Virus record (IMG/VR): IMGVR_UViG_3300038463_000730 | Coordinates: 124,001 to 188,000 of that record | DNA length: 64,000 nt | Direction: 5' to 3' (one strand) | Part shown: piece after piece, positions 26,598 to 63,593 of the stretch | How the letters are laid out: each line of letters starts with the position of its first letter | Position numbering within the stretch: the stretch's first letter is position 1 | Position numbers and translations under genes: made by a program | Notes under the pieces: model-generated | Told to the model about the DNA's origin: nothing | Databases searched by the model: none | What the model saw: the letters and a program-made list of their open reading frames with translations, nothing else

Positions 26598-29500
26598 TTA
26601 CATCCGTGTTGGATCTAGATTGTAGATCGACACGTTGATAATCGGCGCTGCCCAAGAAGCGTAAGCCAATCCGGACGGATCAGGAGACTGAATCTGAAGG
26701 ATATAGCTAAAACTCGAATCGTCCAGCACAAGGCCGCCTGGTATGGTGCATACATATGTACCAACGCTCGGTGTTGTCCCGCTCCAAGAGAACGTGGCTC
26801 CTTGTGCTGTATTGGTCGCTCCAGGGCCATTTATGGATAGAGTAATCGGCGTAGATGCTCCCTGGTTATTCGGGTACGCATAGAGCGAAATAGACGGACC
26901 AGCGGTCCATGGTTTTCCAGGATGTCCTAGTGCGTAGGTAATGTTAAAGCTATTCATCGTAGATCCATTCGGGAATCTCGAAATAGCAAGCTGCATTTGC
27001 CCTGCGCTACCTGCCGTACCGTCAAGCGTTGAGAACAAAGTCGTTCCCGGTCCTCCAGCGCCAAGGTTTCCGCTGTAACCGTAGGTGACGGAAGCACCAC
27101 CGACATAACCGCCCCAGATAGCTGGCTGGCATATGTTCCGCACAACCGGAACAATCAACGGTGGAATGTTTTCAGAGTAACTGTGCAGGTTGGCAAGATT
27201 TGAACGAATCAACGATGCACTGTTGCTGTAGACAACCAATGTATAGTTGGAAGCGCCATCTACCGTTTCTGAATCGAAGAAGTTGCCAGTAACACTTACA
27301 AGTCCTGACGAAGACGTAACATTAATGTAAGACGCGATTACATTCGTGTAACGATAGAATTGGTTACCCGTAATCGTGCATTGACGTCCGTTGACTCCGT
27401 AATATGTGATGAACGTTCCGGTGCCGGATTGGTTGAGGCAACCGTCGAACGTGTTATCCGTGATCGACCCACCCGGAGCCATGAATACACAGTTGTCGTA
27501 ATAGTAAATCGTTTGTGGCGTTAGAGTGTTGTCCGTGTGAGAACCGACGAAGAACATGTTTCCACTGATTTTCACGTTTCCAACGTCTCCGCCCGAACCT
27601 GAGTTCGCATCGCAACGAATAGCCGAATTCGATGGAGTTCCACGATCCTCTAGAGCGTCTACGTTTCCTATGTAGTTCCCAAGGAACGTCGTCGAGTAAG
27701 CCAGGAATCGATTATTCAATATCTGGAGTGTCGTGGCGTGCGTCGAGAGCGTTGTCGTATCATTATTGCCGATTTGCGCCTGAACCCAGTTAACCGTGTT
27801 CTCGCGAATGATAGTCGAGCCGATCCAGTACGTTCCGTCGCCACCAGTCTGGTAGCGGTGAAGACCGTCCTCGCAGGCCGTAGCAATCAAGTGACACGAG
27901 TTACCTGCGATGATCAGCGTCTCGTCCTTGTCACGAGTTAGCTGGCTCAAGTTCGGTGTGTTGCGTGGATAATCGAGCTGGTGCCAGTACAGAATCGCAC
28001 CGCACACGTTATTTTCGATGTGAACGTTGATCATTGCGGTAGATGATCCGGGAGACGAACCGTTTCGCTGTGCGCCCAAGAAAATCATCTGATTCTTGTC
28101 ACAATAGTTTTTATTGATGTGACAGTTGATAAGTTTCGGAGCTTCGTTGCCGCTCGTATACCCGGCCGGGTGACCAGTTAGAAGCGCAAACGCCGGAGCC
28201 AAATCATCTACCGATGTCGTAGATATGAACTGATTATTCTCGATGTAGAAGTTCGACAGAAATGTGTCAGCCGCAGCATTAGCTTGAACGGCGTAGAACG
28301 AGATTACTGGGTAACGATTGACCGTTGTCGTTGTAAACTTACAGTTACGAATATAGATGTTCTGAATGGTTTGGTCTGAGAACAAACCAGCGATTGCTCC
28401 ATACGTAGCCGAGCTAACAGTGGGAGGAGGTGTCTGAGGCGATGATGGACCGGTGCAGTTGACTAGGTAAGACGACGACCACGTTGCATCATTTGTTGCA
28501 TCGTAATTGTACGTGATGTTACATCCGTCGAACGTTGTGTTGCTTTTAACATTGAAACCAGTCTGACCGTTCACAGTTATTGTGCAACCCTTGAAGCTTG
28601 CAAAAGACCCGGCAGCAAAAGATAAGAACGCTCCAGGGGCAAGGCTCATCGTGCAGCCATTGAACGCCATCGTCATGCCAGAAGATATCGTGATTGTGTT
28701 TACAGCTGCAAAGATAATGTTGCAATTATTGAACGTTACGTTGCCACCGTTGGTAAGCATCGCCAACGTGGTACCGAAATTAAACGTACAGTTATTGAAC
28801 GTTACTTGCCCACCTTCAAAGAAGTTGATGCCGTACCCGTCATTGAAAGTACAGTTATTGAATGTTGATACGCTTCCTGCCTGGAAAGCTAGACCGGTGA
28901 ATCCGCCACCAAGGAATGTAAACGTTATGTTTTCAAAATTGGCAACTGAAAACATATCAAATAGTGAGTTTGCCTGAAAAACAAAGGCCCCAGCTCCATC
29001 ACCAATAAAATCAACTGGTTGAGGATAACTCAGTGTCAAAGCGCCAAGAATTGAATTGCTGCCTTTTACTTTGATGCGAGATTCGTAAGACGAATTGTAT
29101 TTGAGATACGCATTAACCACTGCAAACTGTGAGAAGTTCCCAGTGCTCGGGTCCGCGCTCAACACTGGGGAGATGTTCTGATCCGAGTTCCGAATGAATT
29201 TACGAACGTCGGTCACAAACGCCGATGCGCCCTGCTGATTGAATAGATAGAGTGGTGTCAAATCTTTGCGTGTATTGAGCAAAGATGAGAATGTTGTTGA
29301 ATCAACCGGGTACGATACAAGTGTCGTTGGATTGTAAAGAGTAAGCAATCGACCAGGATTGTTTATCGCATTGACCGTAGTGTCGTAGTCCGTAATAGGA
29401 ATGGTCTGAATCTCTGCTTTTTGGTTAACACAGATAACCCAGTTCACACCGTTGATTGGCGTTCCGCCGTTGTTGTCTTGAACAGCCGGGATATTAACAG

Positions 29501-32861: not shown

Positions 32862-33311
32862 TCACTTTAATCTTGCTACCAACAATCGAACATTCAAATA
32901 GTTTGGTGGACCGAGCGCTTCTAGACTTGGAACATAATAGTTGTGAAAATCAGTAGCAATTGTAATAAATGTTGTTGAAGGAGAGCCATATACCGTTCTA
33001 TTCCATGGAAAAGCCATGATCTCATTCAAGTACATATAGTAAAGATGAATACTATATGAACTTTTCAACATGTCTAGTTTGTATCGCACGGTGCCAGAAA
33101 TGTCTGTAGGGAATCTGCGGTTAAAAATGTTCGAGTAGTAACCGTCCCGTATATTAGCTAATCCGATGTAGAACTCAGGAGTGATATAGTCATCAAACCC
33201 TTTGCAGTATCCATCTATAAAACCGCTCTGTAAGCAGATCTCTTTCCATGTTACGTGACCATAACCATCATCCGCTGTTGCAACTTCGACAAAACTTCTA
33301 AATTCTAACAT
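32862..33311 (-). CDS. Hypothetical protein with three DGY motifs
   Basis: 149-aa ORF with AGGA ribosome-binding site, in the fibre gene cluster. Confidence 0.7.
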   Translation of the reverse strand: MLEFRSFVEVATADDGYGHVTWKEICLQSGFIDGYCKGFDDYITPEFYIGLANIRDGYYSNIFNRRFPTDISGTVRYKLDMLKSSYSIHLYYMYLNEIMAFPWNRTVYGSPSTTFITIATDFHNYYVPSLEALGPPNYLNVRLLVARLK

Positions 33312-38125: not shown

Positions 38126-39718
38126 TTATCGTTCCTTGGTGAAAATGATTTCGTGTTTATGTCCCAATACTTCCTGCACCTCGCCATCAACAATCATGTG
38201 TTCATGGCCTGCCGAACTTCCGGTCACCTGGTTTATCTCTCCAGGATGCGTGCATTTCTTGCTAACGACAACAGTATGACTGTGTGGCAACAAACCAGGT
38301 ACCTGAGCCACCGACGTACGCAAATTGGTTGGCATTGGTGAAGCGTTACTGAAGACCCTTACATGATAAATCGGATCCGTCTTACGAACACGTTGGATCT
38401 TGAACTTCTGTCCGCCCATCATGCTCTGAAGTAAACGATTACGAGTGACAGACAGTACTTCGTACCGATACTCTTCAATACCGTTCTGATCGTATCGAAC
38501 AATCATGTCGCGATCTTTGATCGTCGGAACAGTCAAGCTCCAGCAATCAAAATTGCTTTGCGACTCCAATCCGGCATCACCCATTTTCAAGTCATCCTCG
38601 ACCGGTCCGAAACGTACCATGATTCGACGGTCTGCTCGACGTGGATTGAAGTACTGTTTCCAACCGATAACAAAGCCTGTTCCAAAACACTTTAGGCACC
38701 GGTCATCCGGATACTCACTCGATGGCAAGTAACAACTACAGATCACGCCTGTACGTTGACGATTGAGCAACACGATCGGTTCGCCCGTTACACTTAGCAA
38801 TATCTCTTGACGTTGTTCATTCTGTTCTTGCAAGGACAATCCCCTAACAACCATGCCTACTCCTGTAGACGGGTCTGCGTAATACTCTTCTCCACCGATA
38901 TAGCTACCTACGTTTCCACCTGTTAGCAATGTCAACGGATCCGTACGGTGCCATCCGGCAAAGTCGTACGACTGGAAACCAACATTCGATTCATCACTCG
39001 TTGCCAAATCAACGGTCAGAATGTCTTTGCGACGCTCCTTGTAACCATCGCGTGGATTGTAAGCGTAGTGGTCAATGTCGAACCGACACTGGGCCTCATA
39101 CGTATGACCGTTAAACTCTTCTGTTCCGACATACAACACTACGAATGGGTCCTGGTATCCATCACTACAATACCCATCGATGTTGTGAAAACTCTGAGGT
39201 GAATTGAGATAGCCACGGTAAGTAACGTTCGGTAGCGTAACGGAGTTGGCCGTTCGAGCATTGAATCGAATGATTTCGCCAAATAGATATCCTCCGACTC
39301 GTAGCATGCCGCTGGTTGGAAAGATGACCGAATCGATCAGCGGAATAGTCAGATCGTTGGCGCCGATATTGCGTAGTAGCAACGATATTGGCATCATGTA
39401 CAAATCTTTTGATGCCGATGGTAGTGAGCTTAGGTCCGTGATCGTAGGATCATACTCAACCGCATGCACGCCGAAGTGATAGATCTGACCTGGACGCAAG
39501 AACGGGATATCGATCTTCGTAATCAAAGACGTCGTGATGTACTTAGGGCCTTCGGCCCAGACGTGATCTTTGTTCTCAGCGTAATAGATGAGGTAAGCAA
39601 CTGAGTTGGAGGCCGTGTTAGGAAATGCCCGTGACCAATACACAGTAATGCTATAGCCATCGTTATTTGCGATAGCCTGATAGCAGCCATTGTAGATCGG
39701 GTTCATGTAATAGGGCAT
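38126..39718 (-). CDS. Neck / head-closure protein with FN3-like N-terminus, Cys cluster and His-rich tail
   Basis: LRPGQIYHFGVHAV (FN3-like); CSC...CLKCFGTGFVIGW; TIKDRDMIV...RYEVLSV; C-terminal HSH/HEH/HKH repeats. Confidence 0.65.
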   Translation of the reverse strand: MPYYMNPIYNGCYQAIANNDGYSITVYWSRAFPNTASNSVAYLIYYAENKDHVWAEGPKYITTSLITKIDIPFLRPGQIYHFGVHAVEYDPTITDLSSLPSASKDLYMMPISLLLRNIGANDLTIPLIDSVIFPTSGMLRVGGYLFGEIIRFNARTANSVTLPNVTYRGYLNSPQSFHNIDGYCSDGYQDPFVVLYVGTEEFNGHTYEAQCRFDIDHYAYNPRDGYKERRKDILTVDLATSDESNVGFQSYDFAGWHRTDPLTLLTGGNVGSYIGGEEYYADPSTGVGMVVRGLSLQEQNEQRQEILLSVTGEPIVLLNRQRTGVICSCYLPSSEYPDDRCLKCFGTGFVIGWKQYFNPRRADRRIMVRFGPVEDDLKMGDAGLESQSNFDCWSLTVPTIKDRDMIVRYDQNGIEEYRYEVLSVTRNRLLQSMMGGQKFKIQRVRKTDPIYHVRVFSNASPMPTNLRTSVAQVPGLLPHSHTVVVSKKCTHPGEINQVTGSSAGHEHMIVDGEVQEVLGHKHEIIFTKER

Positions 39719-55256: not shown

Positions 55257-55985
55257 TTAACTTTCCTTGGTCAGATTCGGTTCCACCAACTTGTCATTGA
55301 TCGTGATCGTAACAGACCGTTGAACTTCTTTGTTGTCTTTTGTAGCTTTCACATCTCCAAACAACTTATCAATCAGATTATCAGGTCCCTTCACCATACC
55401 GGGTGATGCGGCTGTTGTCTTGGTCTGTCCACCCAAATTGCATGCGCGGTAGATTGATTTGTGAAGTAGTTTTTCATCACGATCTAGCAGAATTTGCCTT
55501 ATTTCAGGCTCTCCAAGACGATTGATATCTTCCGGACGCAGCCGATAACGCAAATACATTAGCTCCTCAAGATAATCCATCTGAGGCTTGAAAAAATCCA
55601 TATCTTTCTGTTCTATACGTAACGTACGATCCAAAGATGCACTCAGTATTCGTGCGTAACTATCGAACCAGTCCGGATCGCCCAAGTAGTCATCTTTTAT
55701 CGTATCGACCGCCGTTTTCAGTTTGATAAATGTCTTAAGCTTCTCCGAAGCATCCTTATCAATGTACTGTGCCGAACGATGGTACGTTTGCAGGTTACGT
55801 CGAGCGATGTAGTCAGTTTCTTGATTGATATACCGAGTATCGAACGCCTGCTTTACCATTTCGTTGCTATTTTGAGCTAATTTCTGCCAATATTTTCTGC
55901 GTAACGCCATCGCATCAGCGTGTCTTTCGTGAGATGCATCAACTTTACAAACAATCTCATAAACCTGTAAAAAGTGCTTATTCAT
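55257..55985 (-). CDS. Helical hypothetical protein downstream of the capsid gene
   Basis: 242-aa ORF with AGGA ribosome-binding site; carries KLAQ, KQA and KTA motifs. Confidence 0.7.
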   Translation of the reverse strand: MNKHFLQVYEIVCKVDASHERHADAMALRRKYWQKLAQNSNEMVKQAFDTRYINQETDYIARRNLQTYHRSAQYIDKDASEKLKTFIKLKTAVDTIKDDYLGDPDWFDSYARILSASLDRTLRIEQKDMDFFKPQMDYLEELMYLRYRLRPEDINRLGEPEIRQILLDRDEKLLHKSIYRACNLGGQTKTTAASPGMVKGPDNLIDKLFGDVKATKDNKEVQRSVTITINDKLVEPNLTKES

Positions 55986-56031
55986 CGGTTTCCTATATCA
56001 GTTATGCAAGATTATGAACGGGCAGCGTAGC

Positions 56032-56068
56032 AAAACAGAAAGGGCATCGAATTACTTCGACGCCCTCT
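56032..56068 (-). terminator. Rho-independent terminator after the major capsid gene
   Basis: AGGGCGTCGAA-GTAA-TTCGATGCCCT (11 bp, one G-U, GNRA loop) followed by TTCTGTTTT. Confidence 0.8.
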
Positions 56069-56136
56069 CACTGCCCTTATTCATGACGCCCTAAGGAGCT
56101 GGGCTCGACCGATTAAGGTCAGTATCCTAGTCTAGA

Positions 56137-57153
56137 TTAGACTCCTGGTAGAACAGACTTGCGTCCTGCCGAGACTCCGCGTGGGTTCACGATACCGAGA
56201 CCGATGATCTCGCTCACAACCCATCCTAGCTTCAACTGCTTTGGCTCGTCCGCTGGGAGAACCTCGATGTCCTGACGAACTGGCATAACGCCTACGAACT
56301 CTGGATCCGCTGCCGCGTAAACCGTTCCTGGTGGAACGATCTTGCTGACCATGATGTCAGCTCCCCACAAGTGAGCGTAGAGACCCGTCTGGAGAATCTC
56401 GCGCTGTGTGACTGGATCAACCTCGCCACCGCCTACGCCCTGTCCACCGCCGCTACCCCACTTGAGGATATCTGTGAACTCGTTAATGTTCATGAAGTAC
56501 TTCGTTGTGACCAAGTCCCAACGATCGATCTGCGCCTTCAACTCAAGCAAGTCGCGCTTCAACATACCGGCATCGGTAATGTCCTGTAGCGTGTTCTCAC
56601 CCTGGCTCGCGTTATCGAGTGCCGCGAAGATGTTGGCGTCTTCCTGAGCCATAATCTCCTGACGTGCCTTCTGAACAGCACGGTCGATAACATTGAAACG
56701 ACGACGCTTCACTTCAGCAATACGAACCGTTGGGTTCGCGAAAAGCTCGAACTCTGGAACAACGACGCGGTCTCCGAAGATACGCGACTCTGGTCCTGAA
56801 CCGTTTGAGCTGATTACAACGGCCGCGACATCAATATCGCGATCGTATGTTGGCATTGCTCCCTGTGGAAGTGGGTCAACCACTAGCGCACGACGGGCAA
56901 TTCCATGGTAGTCCAAGTTACGACGAATTGGGTTCGCCATGGCCTGCGCCAAAGCTACTTTTCCGTCCTGGGTTAGGATTGCGCGTGAGATCAAGTCGTC
57001 ACGGCGGTCTTCTGACATCCCAACCTGGCCTGCAAGGCCGATATTTGATGGCTGGTTCTCTTCGAGAATCGCAGCGTACTTCGAGATAACCATCATCGCG
57101 TCTTTCAAAGACGATGCGTTAATCTCTCCCTGTGGTGAAAATAAACTATTCAT
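56137..57153 (-). CDS. Major capsid protein (HK97 fold), 338 aa
   Basis: LAQAMANPIRRNLDYHGIARRALVVDPLPQG, VPEFELFANPTVRIAEVKRRRFNVIDRAVQKARQEIMAQED, G.LWGADIMVSKIVPPGTVY, GWVVSEIIGLGIVNPRGV. Confidence 0.93.
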   Translation of the reverse strand: MNSLFSPQGEINASSLKDAMMVISKYAAILEENQPSNIGLAGQVGMSEDRRDDLISRAILTQDGKVALAQAMANPIRRNLDYHGIARRALVVDPLPQGAMPTYDRDIDVAAVVISSNGSGPESRIFGDRVVVPEFELFANPTVRIAEVKRRRFNVIDRAVQKARQEIMAQEDANIFAALDNASQGENTLQDITDAGMLKRDLLELKAQIDRWDLVTTKYFMNINEFTDILKWGSGGGQGVGGGEVDPVTQREILQTGLYAHLWGADIMVSKIVPPGTVYAAADPEFVGVMPVRQDIEVLPADEPKQLKLGWVVSEIIGLGIVNPRGVSAGRKSVLPGV

Positions 57154-57201
57154 TTGTTTGTTCCTATATGAGAAATACTTGCCAGTTGCCTAGCTTTGGC
57201 G

Positions 57202-57244
57202 AATAAAACAAACAGTTGGGAAAGTCGCCGCTTTCCCAACTGTT
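57202..57244 (-). terminator. Perfect 14-bp hairpin with U-rich tail between decoration and capsid genes
   Basis: AACAGTTGGGAAAG-CGGCGA-CTTTCCCAACTGTT followed by TGTTTTATT on the minus strand. Confidence 0.6.
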
Positions 57245-57257
57245 ATTAGAACGAAAC

Positions 57258-57974
57258 TTAGAAGCTACCCTTCCAGGTAAACACGGCCATATACATCTGG
57301 GCCTGTGCTGCTCCACCGAGTGGTCCCGATGGTGACGCGAATCCAGACACCAACGTGTTAGGAGTCGTGACTAGTGAGCCAGTTGTCTCGAACGTTAGGA
57401 AGCGACCGATGATCGCTGCGCCGTTCGCTGTACCAGCCGATACGTTTGGTGTGAGCAAGCCCGCTGGGGTTGCATACAACGGTGCGCCCGTTGTGATTGT
57501 GCTGTTCGTTGGGACGAGGCCAGTTGTGCTGGTCGTATCAACGTTGTCGAGCGTGACACCGTAGACACCTGGGTTGCCCCATAGTGTTACTTTGCCAGAA
57601 CCGAGCGCCGTGCTTGGTCCGAGGATAGCGCCTGTATAGCTACCTGGAACGTTGAACTGCTGACCGACTGTTCCACCAACGACTGCTCCGAAGAGTGTTC
57701 CGTAGTGAAGGATACCGTCGTCCGTTAGGAAGAAGGGACCGCTGTTGGCCGCTGTTGGCAACGTGATCGTAATAGCTGGACGAACCTTTGTGGTCGTACC
57801 GGCATATCCGTCTTCCTGTACGTCTGCCGCACTGAGGTCTGTTCCGCCGTAAGCAACTGGGGTAACGCCCGTAAAGGTCGCAACCTCTCCACCCTTGATA
57901 GACGACAGCTGTGAATCAAGCATGTCGAACTGTCCGAATGGACTACCATTGTTATTTTGAAGTACTAAAGCCAT
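57258..57974 (-). CDS. Head decoration / cement protein
   Basis: Immediately upstream of the capsid gene; STALGSGKVTLW..PGVY...GAPLYATPAGLLT beta-tulip-like pattern. Confidence 0.7.
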   Translation of the reverse strand: MALVLQNNNGSPFGQFDMLDSQLSSIKGGEVATFTGVTPVAYGGTDLSAADVQEDGYAGTTTKVRPAITITLPTAANSGPFFLTDDGILHYGTLFGAVVGGTVGQQFNVPGSYTGAILGPSTALGSGKVTLWGNPGVYGVTLDNVDTTSTTGLVPTNSTITTGAPLYATPAGLLTPNVSAGTANGAAIIGRFLTFETTGSLVTTPNTLVSGFASPSGPLGGAAQAQMYMAVFTWKGSF

Positions 57975-58089
57975 TGTGAAATCCTGTTATGTGCTGAACT
58001 TGTCAGCGGTCTTACGTCGGGTCTTACTTTGAAATCTGTAACGAAATATGATGATATTCCCAGATCACTGAGAAAAAAGTGATCCGATG

Positions 58090-59292
58090 TTAATTTTTGT
58101 TTGGGTGAGGTTTATATCCTTCACCCTTCATCCAATATGCAAGAGCAAATGGGTTATCAAGTTCCTTGTGTTTCTTCATCTTCTCAACCGTCTTGCCCCA
58201 GCCTTTCGGACTGACATCATTTTGGTCAGAAGCAGACGATACATTTGCAGTACGCCCAGCACTAACTTGTTGCAAAATCTTCTCGTATTTATTGACTATT
58301 ACTTTCAATCCATTAAGAATGGTTCTTTCTTTTGAACCGACTTCATATAGAGCTTGTAGTGCGTCGAACTGATCTAATATGTCACTTACATCCTGAGCCT
58401 GAGGAGCATAAACCATATCAGATGCTTTTGTTACAGCCCACCATAGTTCATGCTCTTTGGTACCAGAACTAGTTGATTGAGCAAAAGTTGATTCTTTTAA
58501 TTTTTTAAGCGTTTCGTAAACATTGTTTTCGCGACACCAAGCTGTCCATGCATCCACAGCTGCTAACATCTCATCATCACTTAATGGATTCGAATCACCA
58601 ACGGCCGATACGAACGAACTCTCTTCCGGCGCCGGAACGGTCATTCCCTCAAGAGGGTCTCCAGCTGGATCCCAATCATCATCTTCTGGAGTAAGCTCTG
58701 ATATAAGCTCACGACCCTCATAAGATGGTTCTTTTGATAGTTCGGTCAGCTCTTCGTCTTCGAAATTGGCCAATCTCTGCATACACGAATCCGCAAGAGC
58801 CCGAAGCTCCTCTTCATTCGTATTGTCAAGATGATTACCGACACGAACAAGCTCCATCATCAATGCACGCTGAGCAAGCTTACGATAGTTAGCGTTACCG
58901 GTCGGGTTACGACTTAGTATGTTGATAATGATCTTCTGACGCTCGATGTTGTTCTCTACCAAGCCGTTGATGCGGTCATACGCCGGAGCAATGACGACTG
59001 ACTCAGGGTGAGCCTGTTCCATCATGTTTTTCAGGCCATTTTCGATGTCTTTGTTCGGCTTAACACCATAGAATGCTTCCGGAGCACTGATGTCACCAGT
59101 GTCCCAACGCATCCATGAATCGGCACCGTTGTTCGGGTTGTCGATCACTCCTGGAGTCTTGCTGGTTGCCCCGCCCATGTTTCTCTGAGCAGTCTTAGTC
59201 TGCAACCTGACCTGAGACTCCGGAGCAACGAGGCCCATCTTCTCAGCTACCTTCGCATACTCTTCAAATACTTCGCTTCTACGTTCGCGCAT
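58090..59292 (-). CDS. Putative internal head protein, 400 aa
   Basis: Helical and acidic; AHP...PTG module shared with 61858..63510; basic C-terminal GWGKTVEKMKKHKELDNPFALAYWMK. Confidence 0.6.
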   Translation of the reverse strand: MRERRSEVFEEYAKVAEKMGLVAPESQVRLQTKTAQRNMGGATSKTPGVIDNPNNGADSWMRWDTGDISAPEAFYGVKPNKDIENGLKNMMEQAHPESVVIAPAYDRINGLVENNIERQKIIINILSRNPTGNANYRKLAQRALMMELVRVGNHLDNTNEEELRALADSCMQRLANFEDEELTELSKEPSYEGRELISELTPEDDDWDPAGDPLEGMTVPAPEESSFVSAVGDSNPLSDDEMLAAVDAWTAWCRENNVYETLKKLKESTFAQSTSSGTKEHELWWAVTKASDMVYAPQAQDVSDILDQFDALQALYEVGSKERTILNGLKVIVNKYEKILQQVSAGRTANVSSASDQNDVSPKGWGKTVEKMKKHKELDNPFALAYWMKGEGYKPHPNKN

Positions 59293-59293
59293 G

Positions 59294-60415
59294 TTATTCC
59301 TTCTTTAATGCTGGTTGTTGCGTAGACTGCTGTTCTGGCTCCGGCATCTTACTAGCAACATCTCCAACAAATAAATCAACCAACTCTTTTCTGCTGTTAG
59401 CAGAGTATTGGCCGAATTGATGTGGCATCCATGTGATGGATGGATAGTGATTCTCTGAGTTCTCGCTCTTGATTACGTTAACAATGGTTTTCAACATCGG
59501 TGACGAAGCTAACTGACCACGCTGCGGTCCAAGCTGCGGATAGATCTGAAGCGCCCAATTAACCAACGTGTCACCAATCGTGTTGAGTGGAACATCTTCC
59601 TCCCATATTGCACGCGGGTCCTGGTTTTCCGTGCCGAACCCGGATGGCTTGAGCCAAGCCGGTACTGCTGGTGGTGTCGGAATGGCTGATTGCTGAGCCG
59701 GTTCCCCCGCAGCAGGTTTGGTATCTCCGCTAAACGTCTTCTGGACCAGCTTGCGCTTCACGAACATCGAACATGCGCCCAAAATAGTCTGAAACAACCA
59801 TTTAAAGAAGCGACCAATCCAACCTTTGGCAAGATTCTTACCCATGAGTTTTTCGATAATGCTTTTACCCGGTCCTTCAGCAAGCCATTTGATACCACTT
59901 TGAATTGGCGCTGTTAATGCCGCTTGTTTGATTATCGTTGCCGCGACACCGACACGTTCCCAGGCTTCACGGATCTGATGATCATCTGCGTTTGAACCAC
60001 CAAGATGTTGATCAACAGCTGTCTTGACAGTATTGCTATCAATCGTCCCGCCAGCTCGCAATTTCTCAACAAGTGAGTCCTTGATACTTTTGAAAATTGC
60101 AAACGGCTTTACATTGAAGCCTATTTCGGCGATCAAATCAACCAATGTGATAAACCAACCTCCATAGACACCGATCACGCCTTCAAACGCCAACTCAGCA
60201 AATGCCGCAACCCAATCATCTTTGGCTTTCGCTATTTCATCTGTTACGAACTGCGAGATCGCTCCAGCAACGGTTCCAAGAAATGACGATACCATCTCTG
60301 ACAGATCAGCAGTCTTATGCAGAGGTAAACGGATACGTCCTGCCAACGAATCAGGCATCAAGTACCGATCCATCATCATCGTATCTTCTAGGTATTGTTT
60401 ATCTATGATTGCCAT
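59294..60415 (-). CDS. Putative internal head / ejection protein with hydrophobic helices
   Basis: AAFAELAFEGVIGVYGGWFITLV and GWIGRFFKWLFQTILG segments; KTA and KQA motifs. Confidence 0.55.
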   Translation of the reverse strand: MAIIDKQYLEDTMMMDRYLMPDSLAGRIRLPLHKTADLSEMVSSFLGTVAGAISQFVTDEIAKAKDDWVAAFAELAFEGVIGVYGGWFITLVDLIAEIGFNVKPFAIFKSIKDSLVEKLRAGGTIDSNTVKTAVDQHLGGSNADDHQIREAWERVGVAATIIKQAALTAPIQSGIKWLAEGPGKSIIEKLMGKNLAKGWIGRFFKWLFQTILGACSMFVKRKLVQKTFSGDTKPAAGEPAQQSAIPTPPAVPAWLKPSGFGTENQDPRAIWEEDVPLNTIGDTLVNWALQIYPQLGPQRGQLASSPMLKTIVNVIKSENSENHYPSITWMPHQFGQYSANSRKELVDLFVGDVASKMPEPEQQSTQQPALKKE

Positions 60416-60427
60416 TGATTACCAGCG

Positions 60428-61858
60428 TTAGTATAGTAACTGTGCTATCTTGTTAAATCGCCCAGTCCAAGTGTTTGCAATTTGCTGCTGTTGCGAAATC
60501 ATCGTATTGGTAAGTCCCAATGCTTGCAATATTTGGATTACCAAACTTAATACTTCGTTAATCATGATTGCGCAGTTACGCCCATCAACATCTTGCATGC
60601 CTGACTTCATAACTCGCTCTTTGAAAACGGTTGCAGGGTTGGAACCACCCATGCCACCGGCATCATCTGCATTGATCGTAGTCTTCTTGACCCATGTGTT
60701 ACGAATCTGGTCTAGTTTGTCGCGAGCTTCACCGACCGTCTGGCTTAGTTCGTTAAGTCTGCGTTGAATTACCGGATTGGACTCACCCGGCTTCGTTGCG
60801 GCTTTCGTATTGTAAATAGCAGCTAGATTCTGCACCATTTGATCGTTGTATTTGACCAACCATCCGCCTTCTCCTCCAACGAGGTTGAAGAACTGTTCGA
60901 TTCGGTCCAAATACAACGGATCCCCAAGCGGGGCTCCGCCGATAGCCGAGATAACAGCTTCGGTCATCTTAGTAGATGCGTCGCCTTGACCCTGGTTCTG
61001 GCCCTGGTTACCGCCCTGCTGAGCCGGTTCACCTGATCCGGGCTGTGCCGGTTGGGCTGGTTGTCCTTGCCCCTGACCCGTTCCACCCGCAGCCGTTCCA
61101 GCAGCTTGGTTCGCATTCGGATCCGCATTGAAACGGTTGATCATATCCATGATCTCGCGAATATACTTTTCCATCACTGGAGCAAGTTTCGGAAGGTCCG
61201 CCTTTTTCCAATCCTTTGGAATCTGAACGGCGAAACTGTTTAGTTCTTGATAATTGAACTTACCAGTGTCGATCTTGTATTGGTCAGCCAATCTAAGTAT
61301 CGCCGAGCCAATCTGCGAAGCATAACCTAGTGAGCGATTGGTTTTATCTTCCCACATACCATCGGCTTTCGTCTCATCACCGCGACCTGCGTTTCTGCCG
61401 AGATGGCGCATCTGTTCGATGTATTTCTTACCTTCATCCGACATCAACACGCCAAGAGCATGTGTCTTCTGAACAGCTTGGTTTTCAAGCAGATCTACCA
61501 GTTCGATAATAGCATTTTGCATGCTTACTACCGATGGATTCTTCATTACATTAGTCGCTTCTTGTGGCGAACGATGTTCTGCTCCGGGCGAATTTGGAGC
61601 ATACTCCGGGTCACCGGTTGCAGCATACATATCCGCTCGTTCTTTATCTGCTGGTGTTTGTTGAGCCGGTTGAGCCGGTTGCCCAGTTGGTTTTTGTTCA
61701 AGACCAATCAGATCACTATTGTCCATATTGATCAAATCGCTGTTATCTGTATCAGGCTGTTTGACAACGTCCTGATTTGGCATAAGCTTCTTAGCTGGCG
61801 CAGCCTTCTGTGCTATTGTAACCAGCTCTCGAACTAGTTTATCGCTAAAAACAGACAT
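60428..61858 (-). CDS. Putative internal head protein with degenerate peptidoglycan-binding-like motif
   Basis: SVVSMQNAI...ADGMWEDKTNRSL; Gln/Pro/Gly-rich linkers. Confidence 0.55.
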   Translation of the reverse strand: MSVFSDKLVRELVTIAQKAAPAKKLMPNQDVVKQPDTDNSDLINMDNSDLIGLEQKPTGQPAQPAQQTPADKERADMYAATGDPEYAPNSPGAEHRSPQEATNVMKNPSVVSMQNAIIELVDLLENQAVQKTHALGVLMSDEGKKYIEQMRHLGRNAGRGDETKADGMWEDKTNRSLGYASQIGSAILRLADQYKIDTGKFNYQELNSFAVQIPKDWKKADLPKLAPVMEKYIREIMDMINRFNADPNANQAAGTAAGGTGQGQGQPAQPAQPGSGEPAQQGGNQGQNQGQGDASTKMTEAVISAIGGAPLGDPLYLDRIEQFFNLVGGEGGWLVKYNDQMVQNLAAIYNTKAATKPGESNPVIQRRLNELSQTVGEARDKLDQIRNTWVKKTTINADDAGGMGGSNPATVFKERVMKSGMQDVDGRNCAIMINEVLSLVIQILQALGLTNTMISQQQQIANTWTGRFNKIAQLLY

Positions 61859-63510
61859 TACTTAATCCCGCGCTTTGCTAAAAGCGCCAATATCTTTGTT
61901 TTATTGTCCTCCGGATCACCATTCATCGTGGTAACCTGCCCGGCTTTGATTTTTGCCACAAATGCCTTGGTTTGCTCAAACCACGCAGTAAGTGCTGAGT
62001 CATTCTTTGCTGCAATAGCTGGCGCTTTTGGAAGTATTTCCTTCGTAAACCAATCAGCGAAACCAACTAGTGGACTAGTAGTATTCGATTGTGCTCCAGC
62101 TTCACCGGTCGGACCCGGCCCGACTTTTTCTTTAATTTCACCTAGATACTTAAGAGCCGTATCCTGGTTCTTGCTAAGAACGTTCATTAGATTCTGGGTA
62201 GCTTTCTCTACATCGCCCCAAGCGCCCCATCCACGAAAAACGTTCCCATACTGTTGCGAAATATGTTCCCCAACAATCATATAAATCGAGTTAGCTAGTT
62301 TCCAACCTTCACGACACTTATCAGCTGCATCAACTAGCTGCTGAGCAGTAGAATTGGGTGAAAGATTACATGCCGCCGCGATCCCTGGCAGTTGAGCCTT
62401 CAATTGCTCAACATAAAACCACTGACTACGATCTTCTTTGTTTGGATTGTTGCCTAACTCAGGAGCCTGACCTCTTGTGTCCTTCTGGAATTCCTCTTTT
62501 AGATCTTCCGCTTCAGCTACAACGGCATTACCGGCCGCTTGGATCTTCTCTTGCGAATACCACATGTTCATTAGTAATTGGGTTGACCCTCCACCGAGAA
62601 TGCCACCGATCGCGGCCCCCAATGCCCATGTCCCAAGACCAATGGCAGCAATCGTTGATCCAATTCCTCCCCCTCCGGCCGCAGCTCCACCTCCGGCAGC
62701 GGCAGCACCGGCCCCAGCACCGGCAGCAGCCGGAGTAGTAGCGGCAGCCACACCACTATTCGCAATGAACCAGTCCGCTACTTGCGGAGCACCCCTTTGC
62801 GCGAGCATTTTTAGTACTTGCTCTTCGGCTTCTTTCTGAGCAATGCCTTTGGCCGTGCGACTAGCAATCATTCTCTCGATTTCTTGCATGATCGCACCAG
62901 GATTCTTATCCGGCACGGTCTTCGTGAGTTGGTAAATGGCCTTTACCAGCTGACCCATGATTTTGTCAGCTGCGGGGCCGAAAAAAGGGATAGCAGTTTT
63001 CTGCATTTCCTCCTTCTCTGCCAAGATCGTCTTCAATGCAGCCAATACCATTGTCTTCGACGCTAGTTTGCCGGTCGGTTCTTTCTCTACGACGTCTTTG
63101 ATCATTTTGTGTTGATCAAGTTTGTCTTCAACGACGCCAAGCTTGTCATGAGCCTCAGCCATTTCGACCGAACCAGCAGGGTGAGCGAATTCAAGCAGAG
63201 CTTCTCCGGTCTCCCCGTCCGTACCGTACATACGTACATAGTTCTGAGCCCTGACGTTCATGCGGAACTTCTCTTCCACACGCTCTGCCTCGGCAACGAG
63301 CCCCTTTACACGTAAGCCGAAACACAAACGAAGGATATCCTGGTTTAGGTTATCCGATGGAGCCAAACTAACATGACGTGGTGCCCTGGATAGGTTCCGC
63401 GCGGCTCGTTCTAGTCCGGATTCCTCTTTGATTAAATTCTTTTCTTTGGCGAGTTTGGTAAATTGCTGCATTACCTCACTCTGGCTTTCTGAAATGTGCT
63501 TATAAGTCAT
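61858..63510 (-). CDS. Putative internal head / ejection protein with glycine-zipper segment
   Basis: ATG at 63510 with GGAG ribosome-binding site (ORF track start 63534); GIGSTIAAIGLGTWALGAAIGGILGGG. Confidence 0.6.
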   Translation of the reverse strand: MTYKHISESQSEVMQQFTKLAKEKNLIKEESGLERAARNLSRAPRHVSLAPSDNLNQDILRLCFGLRVKGLVAEAERVEEKFRMNVRAQNYVRMYGTDGETGEALLEFAHPAGSVEMAEAHDKLGVVEDKLDQHKMIKDVVEKEPTGKLASKTMVLAALKTILAEKEEMQKTAIPFFGPAADKIMGQLVKAIYQLTKTVPDKNPGAIMQEIERMIASRTAKGIAQKEAEEQVLKMLAQRGAPQVADWFIANSGVAAATTPAAAGAGAGAAAAGGGAAAGGGGIGSTIAAIGLGTWALGAAIGGILGGGSTQLLMNMWYSQEKIQAAGNAVVAEAEDLKEEFQKDTRGQAPELGNNPNKEDRSQWFYVEQLKAQLPGIAAACNLSPNSTAQQLVDAADKCREGWKLANSIYMIVGEHISQQYGNVFRGWGAWGDVEKATQNLMNVLSKNQDTALKYLGEIKEKVGPGPTGEAGAQSNTTSPLVGFADWFTKEILPKAPAIAAKNDSALTAWFEQTKAFVAKIKAGQVTTMNGDPEDNKTKILALLAKRGIK

Positions 63511-63593
63511 AAGACGGGCTCCGTTCGGGGACAAAATCGATATTGATAGATCCGGGTCTTCCTATATACGTCAAATATAGCAGTTATGATAAG

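What the first reader, a model, noticed from the sequence alone, without database searches (positions are those of the whole stretch)
55257..63510. Complementary K-x-A motif in candidate internal head proteins: possible prohead protease cleavage code
The DGY-free helical proteins flanking the capsid gene repeatedly carry K-[TLQIV]-A, often followed by Q and often at apparent domain boundaries: QKLAQ, VKQAF, LKTAV (55257); AKVAE, TKTAQ, RKLAQ (58090); HKTAD, VKTAV, IKQAA (59294); NKIAQ (60428); TKLAK, GKLAS, QKTAI (61858). T4 and phiKZ prohead proteases are known to cut internal proteins at short motifs ending in Glu; a K-x-A specificity would be different. Together with DGY this suggests separate 'inside' and 'outside' peptide codes. 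KxA is also common in helical proteins, so caution applies.
Basis: inference. Interest (0 to 1): 0.6.

Follow-up and report, generated by a model that had tools for sequence, protein, structure and literature searches.

The report
Conserved K-x-A tag on megaphage head proteins
In a 435-kb uncultured "megaphage" related to Bacillus phage G, the little-known proteins encoded next to the capsid gene share a short conserved peptide (hydrophobic-x-Lys-x-Ala, mostly near their N-termini). It is most likely the mark recognised and cut by the phage's head-maturation protease, which would be a cutting rule different from those known in T4 and phiKZ, but no protein data yet show the cut.

Summary
The motifs exist: all 13 listed instances plus two more, 15 K-[TLQIV]-A in 2,049 aa. 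Counting in this genome alone is not convincing. The count is 15 against 5.0±2.2 on shuffling, but 74% of shuffles give some equally frequent a-[5 residues]-b motif.

In 160 related metagenomic loci, K-x-A is the most frequent conserved i/i+2 dyad with a variable middle residue: 9 sites against 1.2 expected, next best 4. All nine lie in p242, p400, p373, p558 and the protease-scaffold protein.

The real motif is [LFIM]-x-K-x-A, often followed by Q. It usually lies in the first 15-50 residues. In this genome 11 of 18 head-module ORFs carry it there, against 37 of 467 elsewhere.

One conserved instance (p400 K138) sits inside a confident helix bundle, not at a domain boundary.

The protease lies about 3 kb beyond the window. 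It is the N-terminal domain of a 1,140-aa protease-scaffold protein, 36% identical to phage G gp19, and it carries many conserved K-x-A sites itself.

Best reading: a P5-P3-P1 cleavage and targeting code (confidence 0.5). The main rival is a docking helix that is not cut. No proteomic evidence exists.

The parts
61858..63534 (-). p558. Head-module protein whose N-terminal ~180 aa are paralogous to p400. It has a glycine-zipper-like hydrophobic segment at residues 291-315. The true start is probably Met9.
   Evidence: hhalign p400 vs p558 gives 98.1% probability, E 7.5e-14. The family consensus starts at query residue 9. Hydropathy scan. [LIFMV]-x-K-x-A is 3.2x over composition in 58 homologues.
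63448..63456 (-). p558 K27-L-A29 (F-T-K-L-A|K), the N-terminal tag site.
   Evidence: [KR]-x-A in 29/31 homologues, Ala 100%. Part of the motif shared with p400, S-E-[IV]-[FM]-x-x-[FL]-x-K-[IVL]-A-x-E-K-G-L.
63061..63069 (-). p558 K156-L-A158 (T-G-K-L-A|S).
   Evidence: Lys kept in 97% of homologues, with A, S or T at the third position. Lies in the region that aligns with the stretch of p400 around K138; this correspondence is inferred from the alignment ranges.
60428..61858 (-). p476. Fast-evolving Q/G/P-rich protein with one hydrophobic segment (residues 428-454).
   Evidence: Only 2-5 detectable homologues. ORFs in the same position in related loci carry an N-terminal helix ending in hydrophobic-x-K-x-A, followed by a Pro/Ala-rich linker.
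61799..61807 (-). p476 K18-A-A20 (I-A-Q-K-A-A-P), in the N-terminal tag MSVFSDKLVRELVTIAQKAAP. The following Pro argues against cleavage exactly here.
Evidence: Sequence. Analogous N-terminal tags.
60443..60451 (-). p476 K470-I-A472 (F-N-K-I-A|Q), four residues from the C-terminus.
   Evidence: Present. Conservation cannot be tested because homologues are too few.
59294..60415 (-). p373. Very divergent head-module protein with a hydrophobic segment at residues 77-99.
   Evidence: Mean column identity 0.18. Hydropathy scan. 17/18 homologues have hydrophobic-x-K-x-A in the first 50 aa.
60308..60316 (-). p373 K34-T-A36 (L-H-K-T-A|D), the clearest isolated linear motif.
   Evidence: K in 29/29 and A in 28/29 sequences, while the middle residue varies (K, N, T, Q, E, S) and the flanks are unconserved. 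L, I or F at K-2.
58090..59292 (-). p400. All-helical head-module protein and paralogue of p558.
   Evidence: AF2 model with 47-sequence alignment, mean pLDDT 60, all helices. hhalign. No Pfam or PHROG family.
59245..59253 (-). p400 K14-V-A16 (E-Y-A-K-V-A|E), at the end of the N-terminal helix 7-18.
   Evidence: K-I-A in 40/48 homologues. 34/38 homologues have the motif in the first 50 aa. Helix 7-18 followed by a break.
58873..58881 (-). p400 K138-L-A140 (Y-R-K-L-A|Q). Conserved, but probably a structural residue pair rather than a cut site.
   Evidence: K-Y-A in 40/48 homologues. Lies inside helix 134-157 of the confident core (pLDDT 82-94).
57258..57974 (-). 238-aa Gly/Thr-rich protein in the position of the phage G decoration protein gp26. 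Serves as a negative control: it has no K-x-A.
   Evidence: Gene order as in phage G. 0 K-x-A. The family shows 0.69x of expectation, and 2/52 have an N-terminal motif.
56137..57153 (-). Major capsid protein (HK97-fold family), with a 45-aa N-terminal extension that phage G lacks.
   Evidence: phrog_2522 E 1.7e-73. 52% identity to phage G gp27 over residues 46-328. Alignment with the phage G, Tunturi_5 and Rctr197k capsid proteins.
57073..57105 (-). Capsid-protein N-terminal extension carrying S-L-K17-D-A19 and V-I-S-K25-Y-A27|A. These are candidate propeptide cut sites.
   Evidence: K25-x-A27 in 58/58 and K17-x-A19 in 51/58 homologues, but the whole protein is 84% conserved. K-D-A is kept in Rctr197k at 33% identity.
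55257..55985 (-). p242, a conserved protein just downstream of the capsid gene.
   Evidence: 51 homologues, mean identity 0.36. Hydrophobic-x-K-x-A is 6.3x over composition. No known family.
55845..55853 (-). p242 K45-Q-A47 (E-M-V-K-Q-A|F-D-T-R).
   Evidence: K and A invariant in 51/51 homologues with a variable middle residue (L, V, N, M, I, Q). F at K-2 in 42/52. The site starts a conserved block.

Best explanation
What is there. The window lies in the head-assembly module of a 434,688-bp uncultured megaphage whose capsid protein is 52% identical to that of Bacillus phage G.

In transcription order on the minus strand, the module runs as follows:
- portal;
- several unknown proteins, one with a phosphatase domain;
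- a 1,140-aa protein whose first ~250 residues are the head-maturation protease and whose remainder is a long helical, scaffold-like extension;
- four small unknown proteins;
- p558, p476, p373 and p400;
- a decoration-like protein;
- the capsid protein;
- p242.

The portal and the protease lie just beyond the window's right end.

The motif. Many of these proteins carry a short linear motif, [L/F/I/M]-x-K-x-A, with G or S sometimes replacing A and Q favoured next. It usually lies 15-50 residues from the N-terminus. In several of these families (p400, p373, the protease-scaffold protein and the positional analogues of p476) it sits at the end of a short amphipathic helix, just before a Pro/Gly/Ala-rich linker.

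Proposed mechanism. This is inference; no step has been shown experimentally.
1. The N-terminal helix carrying the motif targets the protein into the assembling prohead.
2. After shell assembly the protease cuts after the Ala, with hydrophobic at P5, Lys at P3 and a small residue at P1.
3. This removes the tag and chops the protease-scaffold protein into pieces at its linker junctions.
4. The pieces can then leave, or stay as mature internal or ejected proteins.

The geometry matches the P3-x-P1 rule of T4 gp21 (I/L-x-E) and phiKZ/SPN3US (S/A/G-x-E). The residues differ: basic P3 and small P1. A small P1 recalls the Ala|Ser sites of herpesvirus assemblins.

p373, p476 and p558 each carry one membrane-like hydrophobic segment, so they may be ejected, membrane-active proteins.
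For: Identity of the module.
- Capsid protein phrog_2522, E 1.7e-73, and 52% identity to phage G gp27.
- tblastn with phage G proteins finds the portal and the gp19 protease upstream in the same genome.
- The protease domain hits phrog_18299 'head maturation protease' (E 1.3e-15) and NF045541 (E 1.3e-7).
- His133 and Ser184 are nearly invariant.
- The weak structural matches with the longest alignments are T4 gp21 and herpesvirus proteases.

The motif is real.
- K-x-A is the top conserved dyad with a variable middle residue across 21 family alignments: 9 sites against 1.17 expected, P<2e-4. All nine lie in p242, p400, p373, p558 and the protease-scaffold protein.
- It is specific to spacing and order: 21 at i+2, against 5, 6 and 13 at i+1, i+3 and i+4, and 5 for A-x-K.
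- L/I/F/M/V occupies K-2 at 63% against a 26% background. Q after the Ala is 4-fold enriched.

Restricted to the head interior set.
- In homologues, with the query excluded, the motif is 3-6x over composition in p242, p400, p373, p558, w65235, the protease-scaffold protein and w74756.
- It is 0-1.4x in seven of the nine tail-side, decoration and other families (w53067 2.2x and w71051 2.4x are the exceptions).

N-terminal bias.
- 71% of 113 ORFs upstream of the capsid gene in related loci have it in the first 50 aa, against 8% expected. By family: p400 34/38, p373 17/18, p242 39/44. Tail-side families score 0/18, 0/17, 1/28 and 0/26.
- In this genome the figures are 11/18 against 37/467, Fisher 5e-8.
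- Non-homologous ORFs in the position of p476 show helix-hydrophobic-x-K-x-A followed by a Pro/Ala linker.

Sites in the protease-scaffold protein.
- Conserved sites lie just after the protease domain (family position ~265).
- Others lie before the repeated YFQGGG linkers, where K is at P3 in at least 86 of 98 tallied copies and A, G or S is at P1.
- Others lie before a Q..PP linker (636) and ~40 aa from the C-terminus (1098, K-E-A|S).

Distant cultured relatives.
- Phage G gp19 has 8 K-x-A against 2.4 expected, including L-E-K-V-A-S and L-L-K-I-A-S in its C-terminal tail.
- Tunturi_5 gp332 has 16 against 5.6, and gp328 has 19 against 8.8.

Precedent from the literature.
- T4 gp21 cuts at I/LxE (PMC12991175).
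- SPN3US gp245 cuts after A-X-E at P3-P1, mostly releasing N-terminal propeptides (PMC10052503).
- T4 capsid-targeting sequences are 10-20-residue propeptides, and paralogous ejection proteins share identical tagged N-termini (PMC5694885).
Against: - No peptide-level evidence exists. Neither cleavage nor the virion location of any of these proteins has been observed.
- The scissile bond (after Ala, or after Lys) cannot be read from sequence.
- Some conserved K-x-A pairs lie in structured helices: p400 K138 in a core with pLDDT ~90, and capsid K65. These are more likely structural.
- Two sites are followed by Pro (protease L-K-K-I-A-P, invariant; p476 K-A-A-P). Pro at P1' is normally uncleavable.
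- The query itself has lost the Lys at several family-conserved sites: p558 positions 42 and 94, and protease positions 35 and 483. No single site is therefore indispensable.
- Phage G and Tunturi_5 capsid proteins begin at the equivalent of residue ~44, not after K25-Y-A27.
- The protease model is poor (pLDDT 59). No S1 or S3 pocket could be examined, and the fold assignment is inconclusive.
- The tendency for the motif to precede P/G-rich linkers is modest overall (0.116 after, 0.078 before) and absent in p242, p558 and w74756.
- The refinement of the motif (hydrophobic at K-2, N-terminal window) was made on the same data.
Confidence: 0.5

Rival explanations
1. Targeting or docking helix only. 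The conserved hydrophobic-x-K-x-A lies on an N-terminal amphipathic helix that binds the scaffold, portal or capsid interior and brings the protein into the prohead. The protease does not cut at this motif. It cuts elsewhere, or these proteins are not cut at all.
For: - In p400 and p558 the motif is embedded in a longer conserved helix, S-E-I-F-x-x-F-x-K-I-A-x-E-K-G-L-I, predicted helical with pLDDT ~80.
- Hydrophobic at i and Ala at i+4 would lie on one helix face.
- Several conserved sites are in structured helices or are followed by Pro.
- The same block recurs weakly in the C-terminus of the protease-scaffold protein (hhalign E 3.7e-4). That is where HK97 and herpesvirus proteases carry their capsid-binding tails (established knowledge; PMC4498786 for herpesvirus).
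Against: - A binding helix would be expected to conserve a whole face. In p373 and at several scaffold sites only K and A (plus the hydrophobic residue at K-2) are conserved, within otherwise unconserved sequence.
- The motif recurs many times inside the scaffold at linker junctions, where docking makes less sense.
- In T4 the targeting sequence and the cut site are the same element (PMC5694885), so the two readings do not exclude each other.
Confidence: 0.27
2. Chance and composition. K-x-A is simply common in Lys- and Ala-rich helical proteins and has no specific function.
For: - Plain K-x-A in the five proteins is not among the top dyads relative to their own composition.
- 74% of shuffles yield some equally frequent a-[5]-b motif.
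- About half of the listed instances are not conserved.
- [LIFMV]-x-K-x-A is 1.36x over composition genome-wide (208 against 153).
Against: - Conservation test with within-family permutation: 9 against 1.17, P<2e-4, and look-elsewhere P=0.004.
- Specificity of spacing and order.
- Clean split between head-interior families and tail or decoration families.
Confidence: 0.06
3. The conserved Lys is the target of something other than a protease. Examples would be a covalent modification or a cross-link directed by a short consensus, in the way that hydrophobic-K-x-E directs sumoylation in eukaryotes.
For: Lys is the most conserved position (91% across 34 sites). A hydrophobic residue lies close before it, so the form resembles known Lys-directed consensus motifs (own knowledge).
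Against: No modifying enzyme was identified in the module. The only enzyme-like protein there besides the protease is a phosphatase-domain protein. Ala two residues later is equally conserved. The N-terminal and linker-junction positions fit processing better.
Confidence: 0.05

Closest known systems
T4 gp21 prohead protease with capsid-targeting sequences (I/L-x-E cleavage)
   Same: - A short P3-x-P1 recognition rule.
- N-terminal propeptides of 10-20 residues on internal head proteins, which both target the protein to the prohead and are cut off.
- The protease is encoded in the head module and processes itself (PMC12991175, PMC5694885).

Here the tags are about 15-47 residues long and end in hydrophobic-x-K-x-A.
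   Different: - P1 would be Ala (or Gly/Ser), not Glu.
- P3 would be Lys, not Ile or Leu.
- An extra hydrophobic preference appears at P5.
- The protease is fused to a ~890-aa scaffold-like extension.
- Sequence similarity to gp21 is undetectable. Only a weak structural match was found (Z 4.9).
- Nothing here has been shown experimentally.
phiKZ gp175 / 201phi2-1 / SPN3US gp245 (S/A/G-x-E, A-x-E)
   Same: - A giant phage with many head proteins.
- Paralogous internal or ejection proteins sharing a tagged N-terminus, as with SPN3US gp53 and gp54. Here the pair is p400 and p558.
- Multiple motif copies within propeptides (PMC5694885, PMC10052503).
   Different: - All of those proteases cut after Glu.
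- The present phage belongs to a different lineage: phage G-like, with a small HK97-type capsid protein of 338 aa.
- The proposed P1 is a small residue.
Herpesvirus assemblin (UL26/UL80): protease-scaffold fusion with R- and M-sites cut at Ala|Ser
   Same: - An N-terminal protease domain fused in one polypeptide to the scaffold.
- A site releasing the protease and a site near the C-terminus (PMC4498786). Here conserved K-x-A sites lie at family position ~265 and at residue 1098 (K-E-A|S), ~40 aa from the end.
- P1 is Ala. The consensus (V/L/I)-x-A|S is established knowledge and was not re-checked in a paper here.
- The top weak Foldseek hits are HCMV and HSV proteases.
   Different: - P3 is Lys rather than a hydrophobic residue.
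- P1' is most often Gln rather than Ser.
- There are many more sites.
- The host is bacterial.
- Homology rests on PHROG/NCBIfam naming and weak fold matches only.
Bacillus phage G gp19 head-maturation protease
   Same: - The protease domain is 36% identical over ~210 residues.
- It occupies the same position between portal and capsid genes.
- It carries the same N-terminal L-V-K-T-A..V-V-K-I-A-P-K block and two hydrophobic-x-K-x-A-S sites in its C-terminal tail.
   Different: - gp19 is a stand-alone 300-aa protein without the scaffold fusion.
- The phage G capsid protein lacks the 45-aa N-terminal extension.
- p242, p400, p373, p476 and p558 have no tblastn-detectable homologue among the phage G head-module proteins tested.
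- I found no published cleavage specificity for gp19.

Membership tests
Head-maturation (prohead) protease of the HK97 / T4 gp21 / herpesvirus assemblin kind (N-terminal domain of the 1,140-aa protein, outside the window) | Sequence similarity to proteins annotated as head-maturation proteases | tested here: met
   phrog_18299 E 1.3e-15. NF045541 'prohead protease/major capsid protein fusion' E 1.3e-7 over residues 126-245. tblastn with phage G gp19 gives 36% identity, E 6e-32. No Pfam family matched.
Head-maturation (prohead) protease of the HK97 / T4 gp21 / herpesvirus assemblin kind | Conserved catalytic His and Ser | tested here: inconclusive
   D132-H133 and S184-M-G are nearly invariant in 25 diverse homologues and are also present in phage G gp19. 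Their assignment as catalytic residues is by analogy only.
Head-maturation (prohead) protease of the HK97 / T4 gp21 / herpesvirus assemblin kind | Assemblin-like fold | tested here: inconclusive
   AF2 model has mean pLDDT 58.9. Best Foldseek hit is HCMV protease at E 0.04, with T4 gp21 and HSV-1 protease also among the top 32, none significant. VIA-align gives T4 gp21 Z 4.9 (121 residues aligned) and VZV protease Z 4.7, not above unrelated rows.
Head-maturation (prohead) protease of the HK97 / T4 gp21 / herpesvirus assemblin kind | Encoded between the portal and major capsid genes | tested here: met
   Portal at L003:12255-14105, protease at L003:2695-6117, capsid protein at window 56137-57153, all on the same strand.
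Prohead-protease cleavage motif of the T4 / phiKZ type (x-E) | Short motif with fixed P3 and P1 and a free P2 | tested here: met
   K and A are conserved with a variable middle residue at 9 strict and 19 relaxed sites.
Prohead-protease cleavage motif of the T4 / phiKZ type (x-E) | P1 = Glu | tested here: not met
   The conserved last residue is Ala (90%), then Ser or Gly. The site therefore does not belong to the Glu-specific class.
Prohead-protease cleavage motif of the T4 / phiKZ type (x-E) | Mature N-termini mapped immediately after the motif | not testable with these tools
Capsid-targeting sequence / N-terminal propeptide of internal head proteins | Motif within the first tens of residues of proteins encoded in the head module | tested here: met
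   11/18 head-module ORFs against 37/467 elsewhere. 71% against 8% expected in related loci.
Capsid-targeting sequence / N-terminal propeptide of internal head proteins | Protein is present inside the mature head, or is ejected | not testable with these tools
   Only gene position, paralogy and hydrophobic segments bear on this.
Herpesvirus-type protease-scaffold polyprotein | Protease domain and scaffold in one reading frame, with one site after the protease and one near the C-terminus | tested here: inconclusive
   One uninterrupted 1,140-codon ORF. Family-conserved K-x-A at ~265 and at 1098. The query itself has K-S-L rather than K-x-A at ~265. The scaffold function of residues 250-1140 is inferred from the helical, repetitive, linker-rich sequence.

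The most novel reading that the evidence does not exclude
A whole lineage of megaphages uses an assemblin-like head protease with a specificity not described for any phage: Lys at P3 and a small residue at P1, with a hydrophobic residue at P5. The lineage includes hundreds of environmental contigs of 200-480 kb and reaches to the cultivated phage G and Tunturi_5. In this reading, an N-terminal helix ending in hydrophobic-x-K-x-A is a portable 'pack me into the head, then cut me' tag. The packaged, and possibly ejected, proteome of uncultured megaphages could then be read directly from sequence.
Probability: 0.4. Interest if true: 0.7.

Novelty: new variant of a known kind. Interest (0 to 1): 0.58.

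Why it matters
Megaphages are almost entirely uncultured, and most of their genes have no known function. A sequence-readable tag marking the proteins that are loaded into the head and trimmed by the maturation protease would have three uses.
- It would give a first functional label to a set of fast-evolving orphan proteins. Some of them have membrane-like segments and may be injected into the host.
- It would extend the known range of prohead-protease specificities beyond 'cut after Glu', towards the Ala-specific herpesvirus enzymes that share the fold.
- It is directly testable in phage G, which can be grown and whose protease carries the same motif.

Recent work shows that bacterial CBASS immunity senses prohead proteases through decoy loops matching their cleavage motif (PMC12991175). 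Knowing a new specificity therefore also predicts what host sensors against such phages might look like.

Tried and rejected
- Near-identical DNA search in the phage collection found nothing.
- Pfam and PHROG scans of the five proteins found no family. There were only sub-threshold noise hits.
- ESM Atlas look-ups of p400 and p242 gave no usable relatives, and the Atlas models have pLDDT 0.43-0.47.
- A PDB profile search of the protease domain and of the p400 family gave only coiled-coil noise.
There is no docking evidence either way.
- Fold searches of the protease model were inconclusive because the model is poor.
- 'All listed K-[TLQIV]-A are sites' is rejected. Five are unconserved. The middle-residue set [TLQIV] has no support, since Y, E, K, N and S are equally frequent at conserved sites.
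- 'p400 K138 marks a domain boundary' is rejected. It lies within a confident helix.
- A general helix-to-linker junction rule holds only modestly, and only in p400, p373 and the scaffold.
- Literature searches for a published cleavage specificity of phage G gp19 or its relatives found nothing.
- The reads tools and the large protein searches were not used. They would not bear on protein processing.
- Caveats on method. Gene calls came from a simple longest-ORF caller, so some N-termini are a few residues off. For example, p558 probably starts at Met9, and w74756 probably starts at its residue 26.
- My first two large MAFFT runs timed out. The biggest families were aligned with the faster FFT-NS-2 mode.

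Full report
SETTING

The window is bases 124,001-188,000 of a single 434,688-bp IMG/VR virus record. The ORF at 56137-57153 (minus strand) is the major capsid protein. It matches phrog_2522 at E 1.7e-73. Residues 46-328 are 52% identical to gp27 of Bacillus phage G, the only long-cultivated megaphage.

tblastn with the phage G head-module proteins finds two more homologues in the same genome, both upstream on the same strand and just beyond the window's right end:
- the portal (32% identity);
- the gp19 head-maturation protease (36% identity).

The protease is not a free-standing protein. It forms roughly the first 250 residues of a 1,140-codon ORF at L003:2695-6117, window-equivalent 66695-70117. 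It matches phrog_18299 'head maturation protease' at E 1.3e-15 and NCBIfam NF045541 at E 1.3e-7.

Asp132-His133 and Ser184-Met-Gly are nearly invariant in 25 diverse homologues.

The AF2 model is poor (pLDDT 59), so fold searches are inconclusive. Even so, the weak Foldseek list is headed by HCMV protease and includes HSV-1 protease and T4 gp21. In the exhaustive VIA search, T4 gp21 (Z 4.9, 121 residues aligned) and VZV protease (Z 4.7) have the longest alignments.

The remaining ~890 residues are helical, repetitive and linker-rich. This architecture recalls the herpesvirus UL26 protease-scaffold fusion (PMC4498786).

The five proteins in the finding are p558, p476, p373, p400 and p242. The first four lie between this protease gene and the capsid gene; p242 lies just after the capsid gene. 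A 238-aa Gly/Thr-rich protein occupies the position of the phage G decoration protein.

None of the five has a Pfam or PHROG family, an Atlas relative or a PDB relative.

CHECKING THE OBSERVATION

That makes 15 K-[TLQIV]-A and 21 K-x-A in 2,049 residues, with no DGY.

Tests within this genome alone:
- The genome-wide rate of K-[TLQIV]-A is 1.62 per 1000 aa, against 7.3 in these proteins.
- Shuffling each protein gives 5.0±2.2.
- The motif was defined after looking at the data. Allowing any a-[five residues]-b motif, 74% of shuffles do as well.
- Plain K-x-A is not notably above what the proteins' own Lys/Ala-rich composition predicts.

On this evidence alone the observation would be unconvincing.

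INDEPENDENT TEST BY COMPARISON

Two scans of IMG/VR, one with the capsid protein and one with the protease protein, returned 160 related loci.

The capsid proteins there are about 84% identical to the query. The flanking proteins are only 15-45% identical, so conservation in them is informative.

I built alignments for 21 gene families of the module. I then asked, without reference to K-x-A, which residue pairs at i and i+2 are conserved (at least 80% each) while the middle position varies.

Results:
- K-x-A ranks first with 9 sites. The next best pair has 4.
- Permuting conserved residues within each family gives 1.17 expected. P(>=9) is below 2e-4, and P(any pair >=9) is 0.004.
- At looser thresholds the lead grows to 19 against 6.
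- The signal is specific to spacing and order. Conserved K..A pairs number 21 at i+2, but 5, 6 and 13 at i+1, i+3 and i+4. The reverse pair A-x-K numbers 5.
- All nine strict sites lie in p242, p400, p373, p558 and the protease-scaffold protein.
- Across 34 sites with K and A each at 70% or more, L/I/F/M/V occupies K-2 at 63%, against a 26% background.
- Gln is 4-fold enriched right after the Ala. The middle residue is free: Y, L, I, E, Q, K, T, N and S all occur.

The refined motif is therefore [L/F/I/M]-x-K-x-A, often followed by Q. Before the scaffold's repeated YFQG linkers the last position is A, G or S.

- Clearly conserved:
  - p242 K45 (51/51);
  - p400 K14 (about 83%);
  - p400 K138 (about 90%);
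  - p373 K34 (97%, in otherwise unconserved sequence);
  - p558 K27 ([KR]-x-A in 29/31).
- Partly conserved:
  - p373 K163;
  - p558 K156 (Lys 97%, with A, S or T at the third position).
- Not conserved: p242 K35 and K90, p400 K33, p373 K131, p558 K179.
- Untestable: p476 K470.

The query has itself lost the Lys at several sites conserved in its relatives. These are p558 positions 42 and 94 and protease positions 35 and 483.

WHERE THE MOTIF IS, AND WHERE IT IS NOT

In homologues, with the query excluded, the motif's ratio to composition is as follows:

| Family | Observed / expected |
|---|---|
| p242 | 6.3x |
| p373 | 4.2x |
| Protease-scaffold | 4.1x |
| w65235 | 3.9x |
| w74756 | 3.8x |
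| p558 | 3.2x |
| p400 | 3.0x |
| Capsid protein, portal | about 2x |
| Seven of the nine tail-side, decoration and other families | 0-1.4x |
| w53067, w71051 | 2.2x, 2.4x |

The motif is strongly N-terminal:
- Among 113 distinct ORFs lying up to 7 kb upstream of the capsid gene in related loci, 71% have it within the first 50 residues. Composition predicts 8%. Other 50-residue windows of the same proteins score 15%.
- By family: p400 34/38, p373 17/18, p242 39/44.
- Tail-side families score 0/18, 0/17, 1/28 and 0/26. The decoration family scores 2/52.

In the query genome itself, 11 of 18 head-module ORFs carry the motif in the first 50 residues, against 37 of 467 elsewhere (Fisher 5e-8).

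ORFs in the position of p476 in other loci are too divergent to align. Nearly all still begin with a short helix ending in hydrophobic-x-K-x-A, followed directly by a Pro/Ala-rich linker. The N-terminus of p476 (MSVFSDKLVRELVTIAQKAAP...) is of that type.

STRUCTURE AND RELATIONSHIPS

- p400 and p558 share a homologous N-terminal domain of about 170 residues (hhalign 98.1%, E 7.5e-14). This includes the N-terminal motif S-E-[IV]-[FM]-x-x-[FL]-x-K-[IVL]-A-x-E-K-G-L. A weak similarity links this domain to the C-terminal region of the protease-scaffold protein (E 3.7e-4).
- The AF2 model of p400 is all-helical. K14-A16 lies at the end of helix 7-18. K138-A140 lies inside a confident three-helix core (pLDDT 82-94), so that pair is probably structural and not a boundary.
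- p373, p476 and p558 each have one membrane-like hydrophobic segment.
- In the protease-scaffold family, conserved sites lie at four kinds of position:
  - just after the protease domain (~265);
  - before the one or two YFQGGG linker modules;
  - before a Q..PP linker (636);
  - about 40 residues from the C-terminus (1098, K-E-A|S in the query).
- P/G content is about twice as high after the motif as before it in p400, p373 and the scaffold. This does not hold in p242, p558 or w74756.

DISTANT RELATIVES

- Phage G gp19 has 8 K-x-A against 2.4 expected. These include the homologous N-terminal block and two hydrophobic-x-K-x-A-S sites in its C-terminal tail. Phage G gp20 has L-K-K-T-A at residue 10.
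- In the cultured Tunturiibacter phage Tunturi_5, the protein after the protease (gp332) has 16 K-x-A against 5.6 expected. The annotated DNA ejection protein gp328 has 19 against 8.8. Most are [S/T]-K-x-A-[S/K].
- The capsid proteins of phage G and Tunturi_5 start at the equivalent of residue ~44 of the query. The 45-residue extension here is therefore lineage-specific. Rctr197k has a much longer extension and keeps T-K-D-A-L, equivalent to L-K17-D-A19-M of the query.

INTERPRETATION

The pattern has four parts:
- a tiny motif with fixed first and third positions;
- shared by unrelated proteins of the head module only;
- concentrated near N-termini;
- repeated along the protease-scaffold protein.

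This is what is seen for the substrates of T4 gp21 (I/L-x-E, with 10-20-residue capsid-targeting propeptides) and of SPN3US gp245 (A-x-E at P3-P1). In SPN3US the cuts mostly release N-terminal propeptides, and paralogous ejection proteins share a tagged N-terminus (PMC12991175, PMC5694885, PMC10052503).

The main rival is that the element is a docking helix that is not cut there (0.27). It is supported by the longer conserved helix in p400 and p558, by the sites followed by Pro, and by the sites inside folded helices. The two readings are compatible, as in T4.

Chance (0.06) is disfavoured by the comparative tests. A Lys-directed modification (0.05) has no supporting enzyme.

Whether the bond cut is after Ala, as with herpesvirus Ala|Ser sites (established knowledge), or after Lys cannot be decided from sequence.

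NOVELTY

I found no report of the cleavage specificity of phage G gp19 or its relatives. If confirmed, this would be a new variant of a known kind of system, not a new kind.

Noticed in passing
L151:10001-14767 and L131:3742-7824 (relatives); possibly also L120:10001-14722: The protease domain of some related megaphages is interrupted by an intein. Hint and Hom_end_hint Pfam hits reach E 2.3e-11 in 2 of 25 aligned members. The protease-protein match in these loci is about 0.7-1.3 kb longer than in the others.
   Followed up: partly
window 26598-32474 (-), 38126-39718 (-), 32862-33311 (-); also genome 74385-80255 (+): The DGY tripeptide occurs 72 times in the genome against 18 expected from composition. 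It is concentrated in a few giant ORFs, with up to 13 copies in one. Its cause, such as a repeat domain, was not examined.
   Followed up: partly
L003:7051-8262 (-), window-equivalent 71051-72262: A 403-aa protein with a tyrosine / dual-specificity phosphatase domain (Pfam Y_phosphatase3 E 3e-9, PTP-SAK, Tc-R-P) sits inside the head module between portal and protease. It is a candidate packaged enzyme. It begins M-I-K-T-A.
   Followed up: no
L003:2695-6117 (-), residues 385-440 and 478-533 of the 1,140-aa protein: The scaffold part carries one or two copies of the module K-x-[A/G/S]-[Y/F/W]-[F/Y]-Q-G-[G/A]-G-G-x-N-E-P...K-Y..D-P-L-N-E-K...G-D-K-Q-M-E-G-Q. Two copies are present in 33 relatives and one copy in 32. 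The Y-F-Q-G core resembles a TEV/3C-type site, but no such protease was seen.
   Followed up: partly
window 59294-60415, 60428-61858, 61858-63534 (-): p373 (residues 77-99), p476 (428-454) and p558 (291-315, glycine-zipper-like within a long Ala/Gly tract) each have one hydrophobic, membrane-like segment. They may be ejected, membrane-active proteins.
   Followed up: partly
window 57019-57153 (-): The capsid protein has a conserved 45-residue N-terminal extension that phage G gp27 and Tunturi_5 gp334 lack. Rctr197k has an extension of about 168 residues that is Gln-rich.
   Followed up: partly
genome 202131-203753, 210461-211201, 213895-215529, 215553-216062, 222122-223120 (all -; beyond the window): Further ORFs just upstream of the portal carry [LIFMV]-x-K-x-A in their first 50 residues. 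The 544-aa ORF at 213895 has 5 copies against 1.0 expected. These are possible additional packaged proteins.
   Followed up: no
L004 and L084 (contig IMGVR_UViG_3300034065_000050, 40,820 bp): A separate IMG/VR contig is 100% identical at protein level to the window's capsid and protease genes. The same phage is therefore present as a fragment under another record. The 434-kb record is labelled 'provirus' by IMG/VR although it looks like a complete megaphage genome.
   Followed up: no
window 63534 (start of the 61858-63534 ORF) and L003:10756-12243: Start codons are probably called too far upstream. The p558 family begins at the query's Met9 (M-T-Y-K-H). The 495-aa protein's family begins at its residue 26 (M-Q-K-T-A-Q).
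   Followed up: partly
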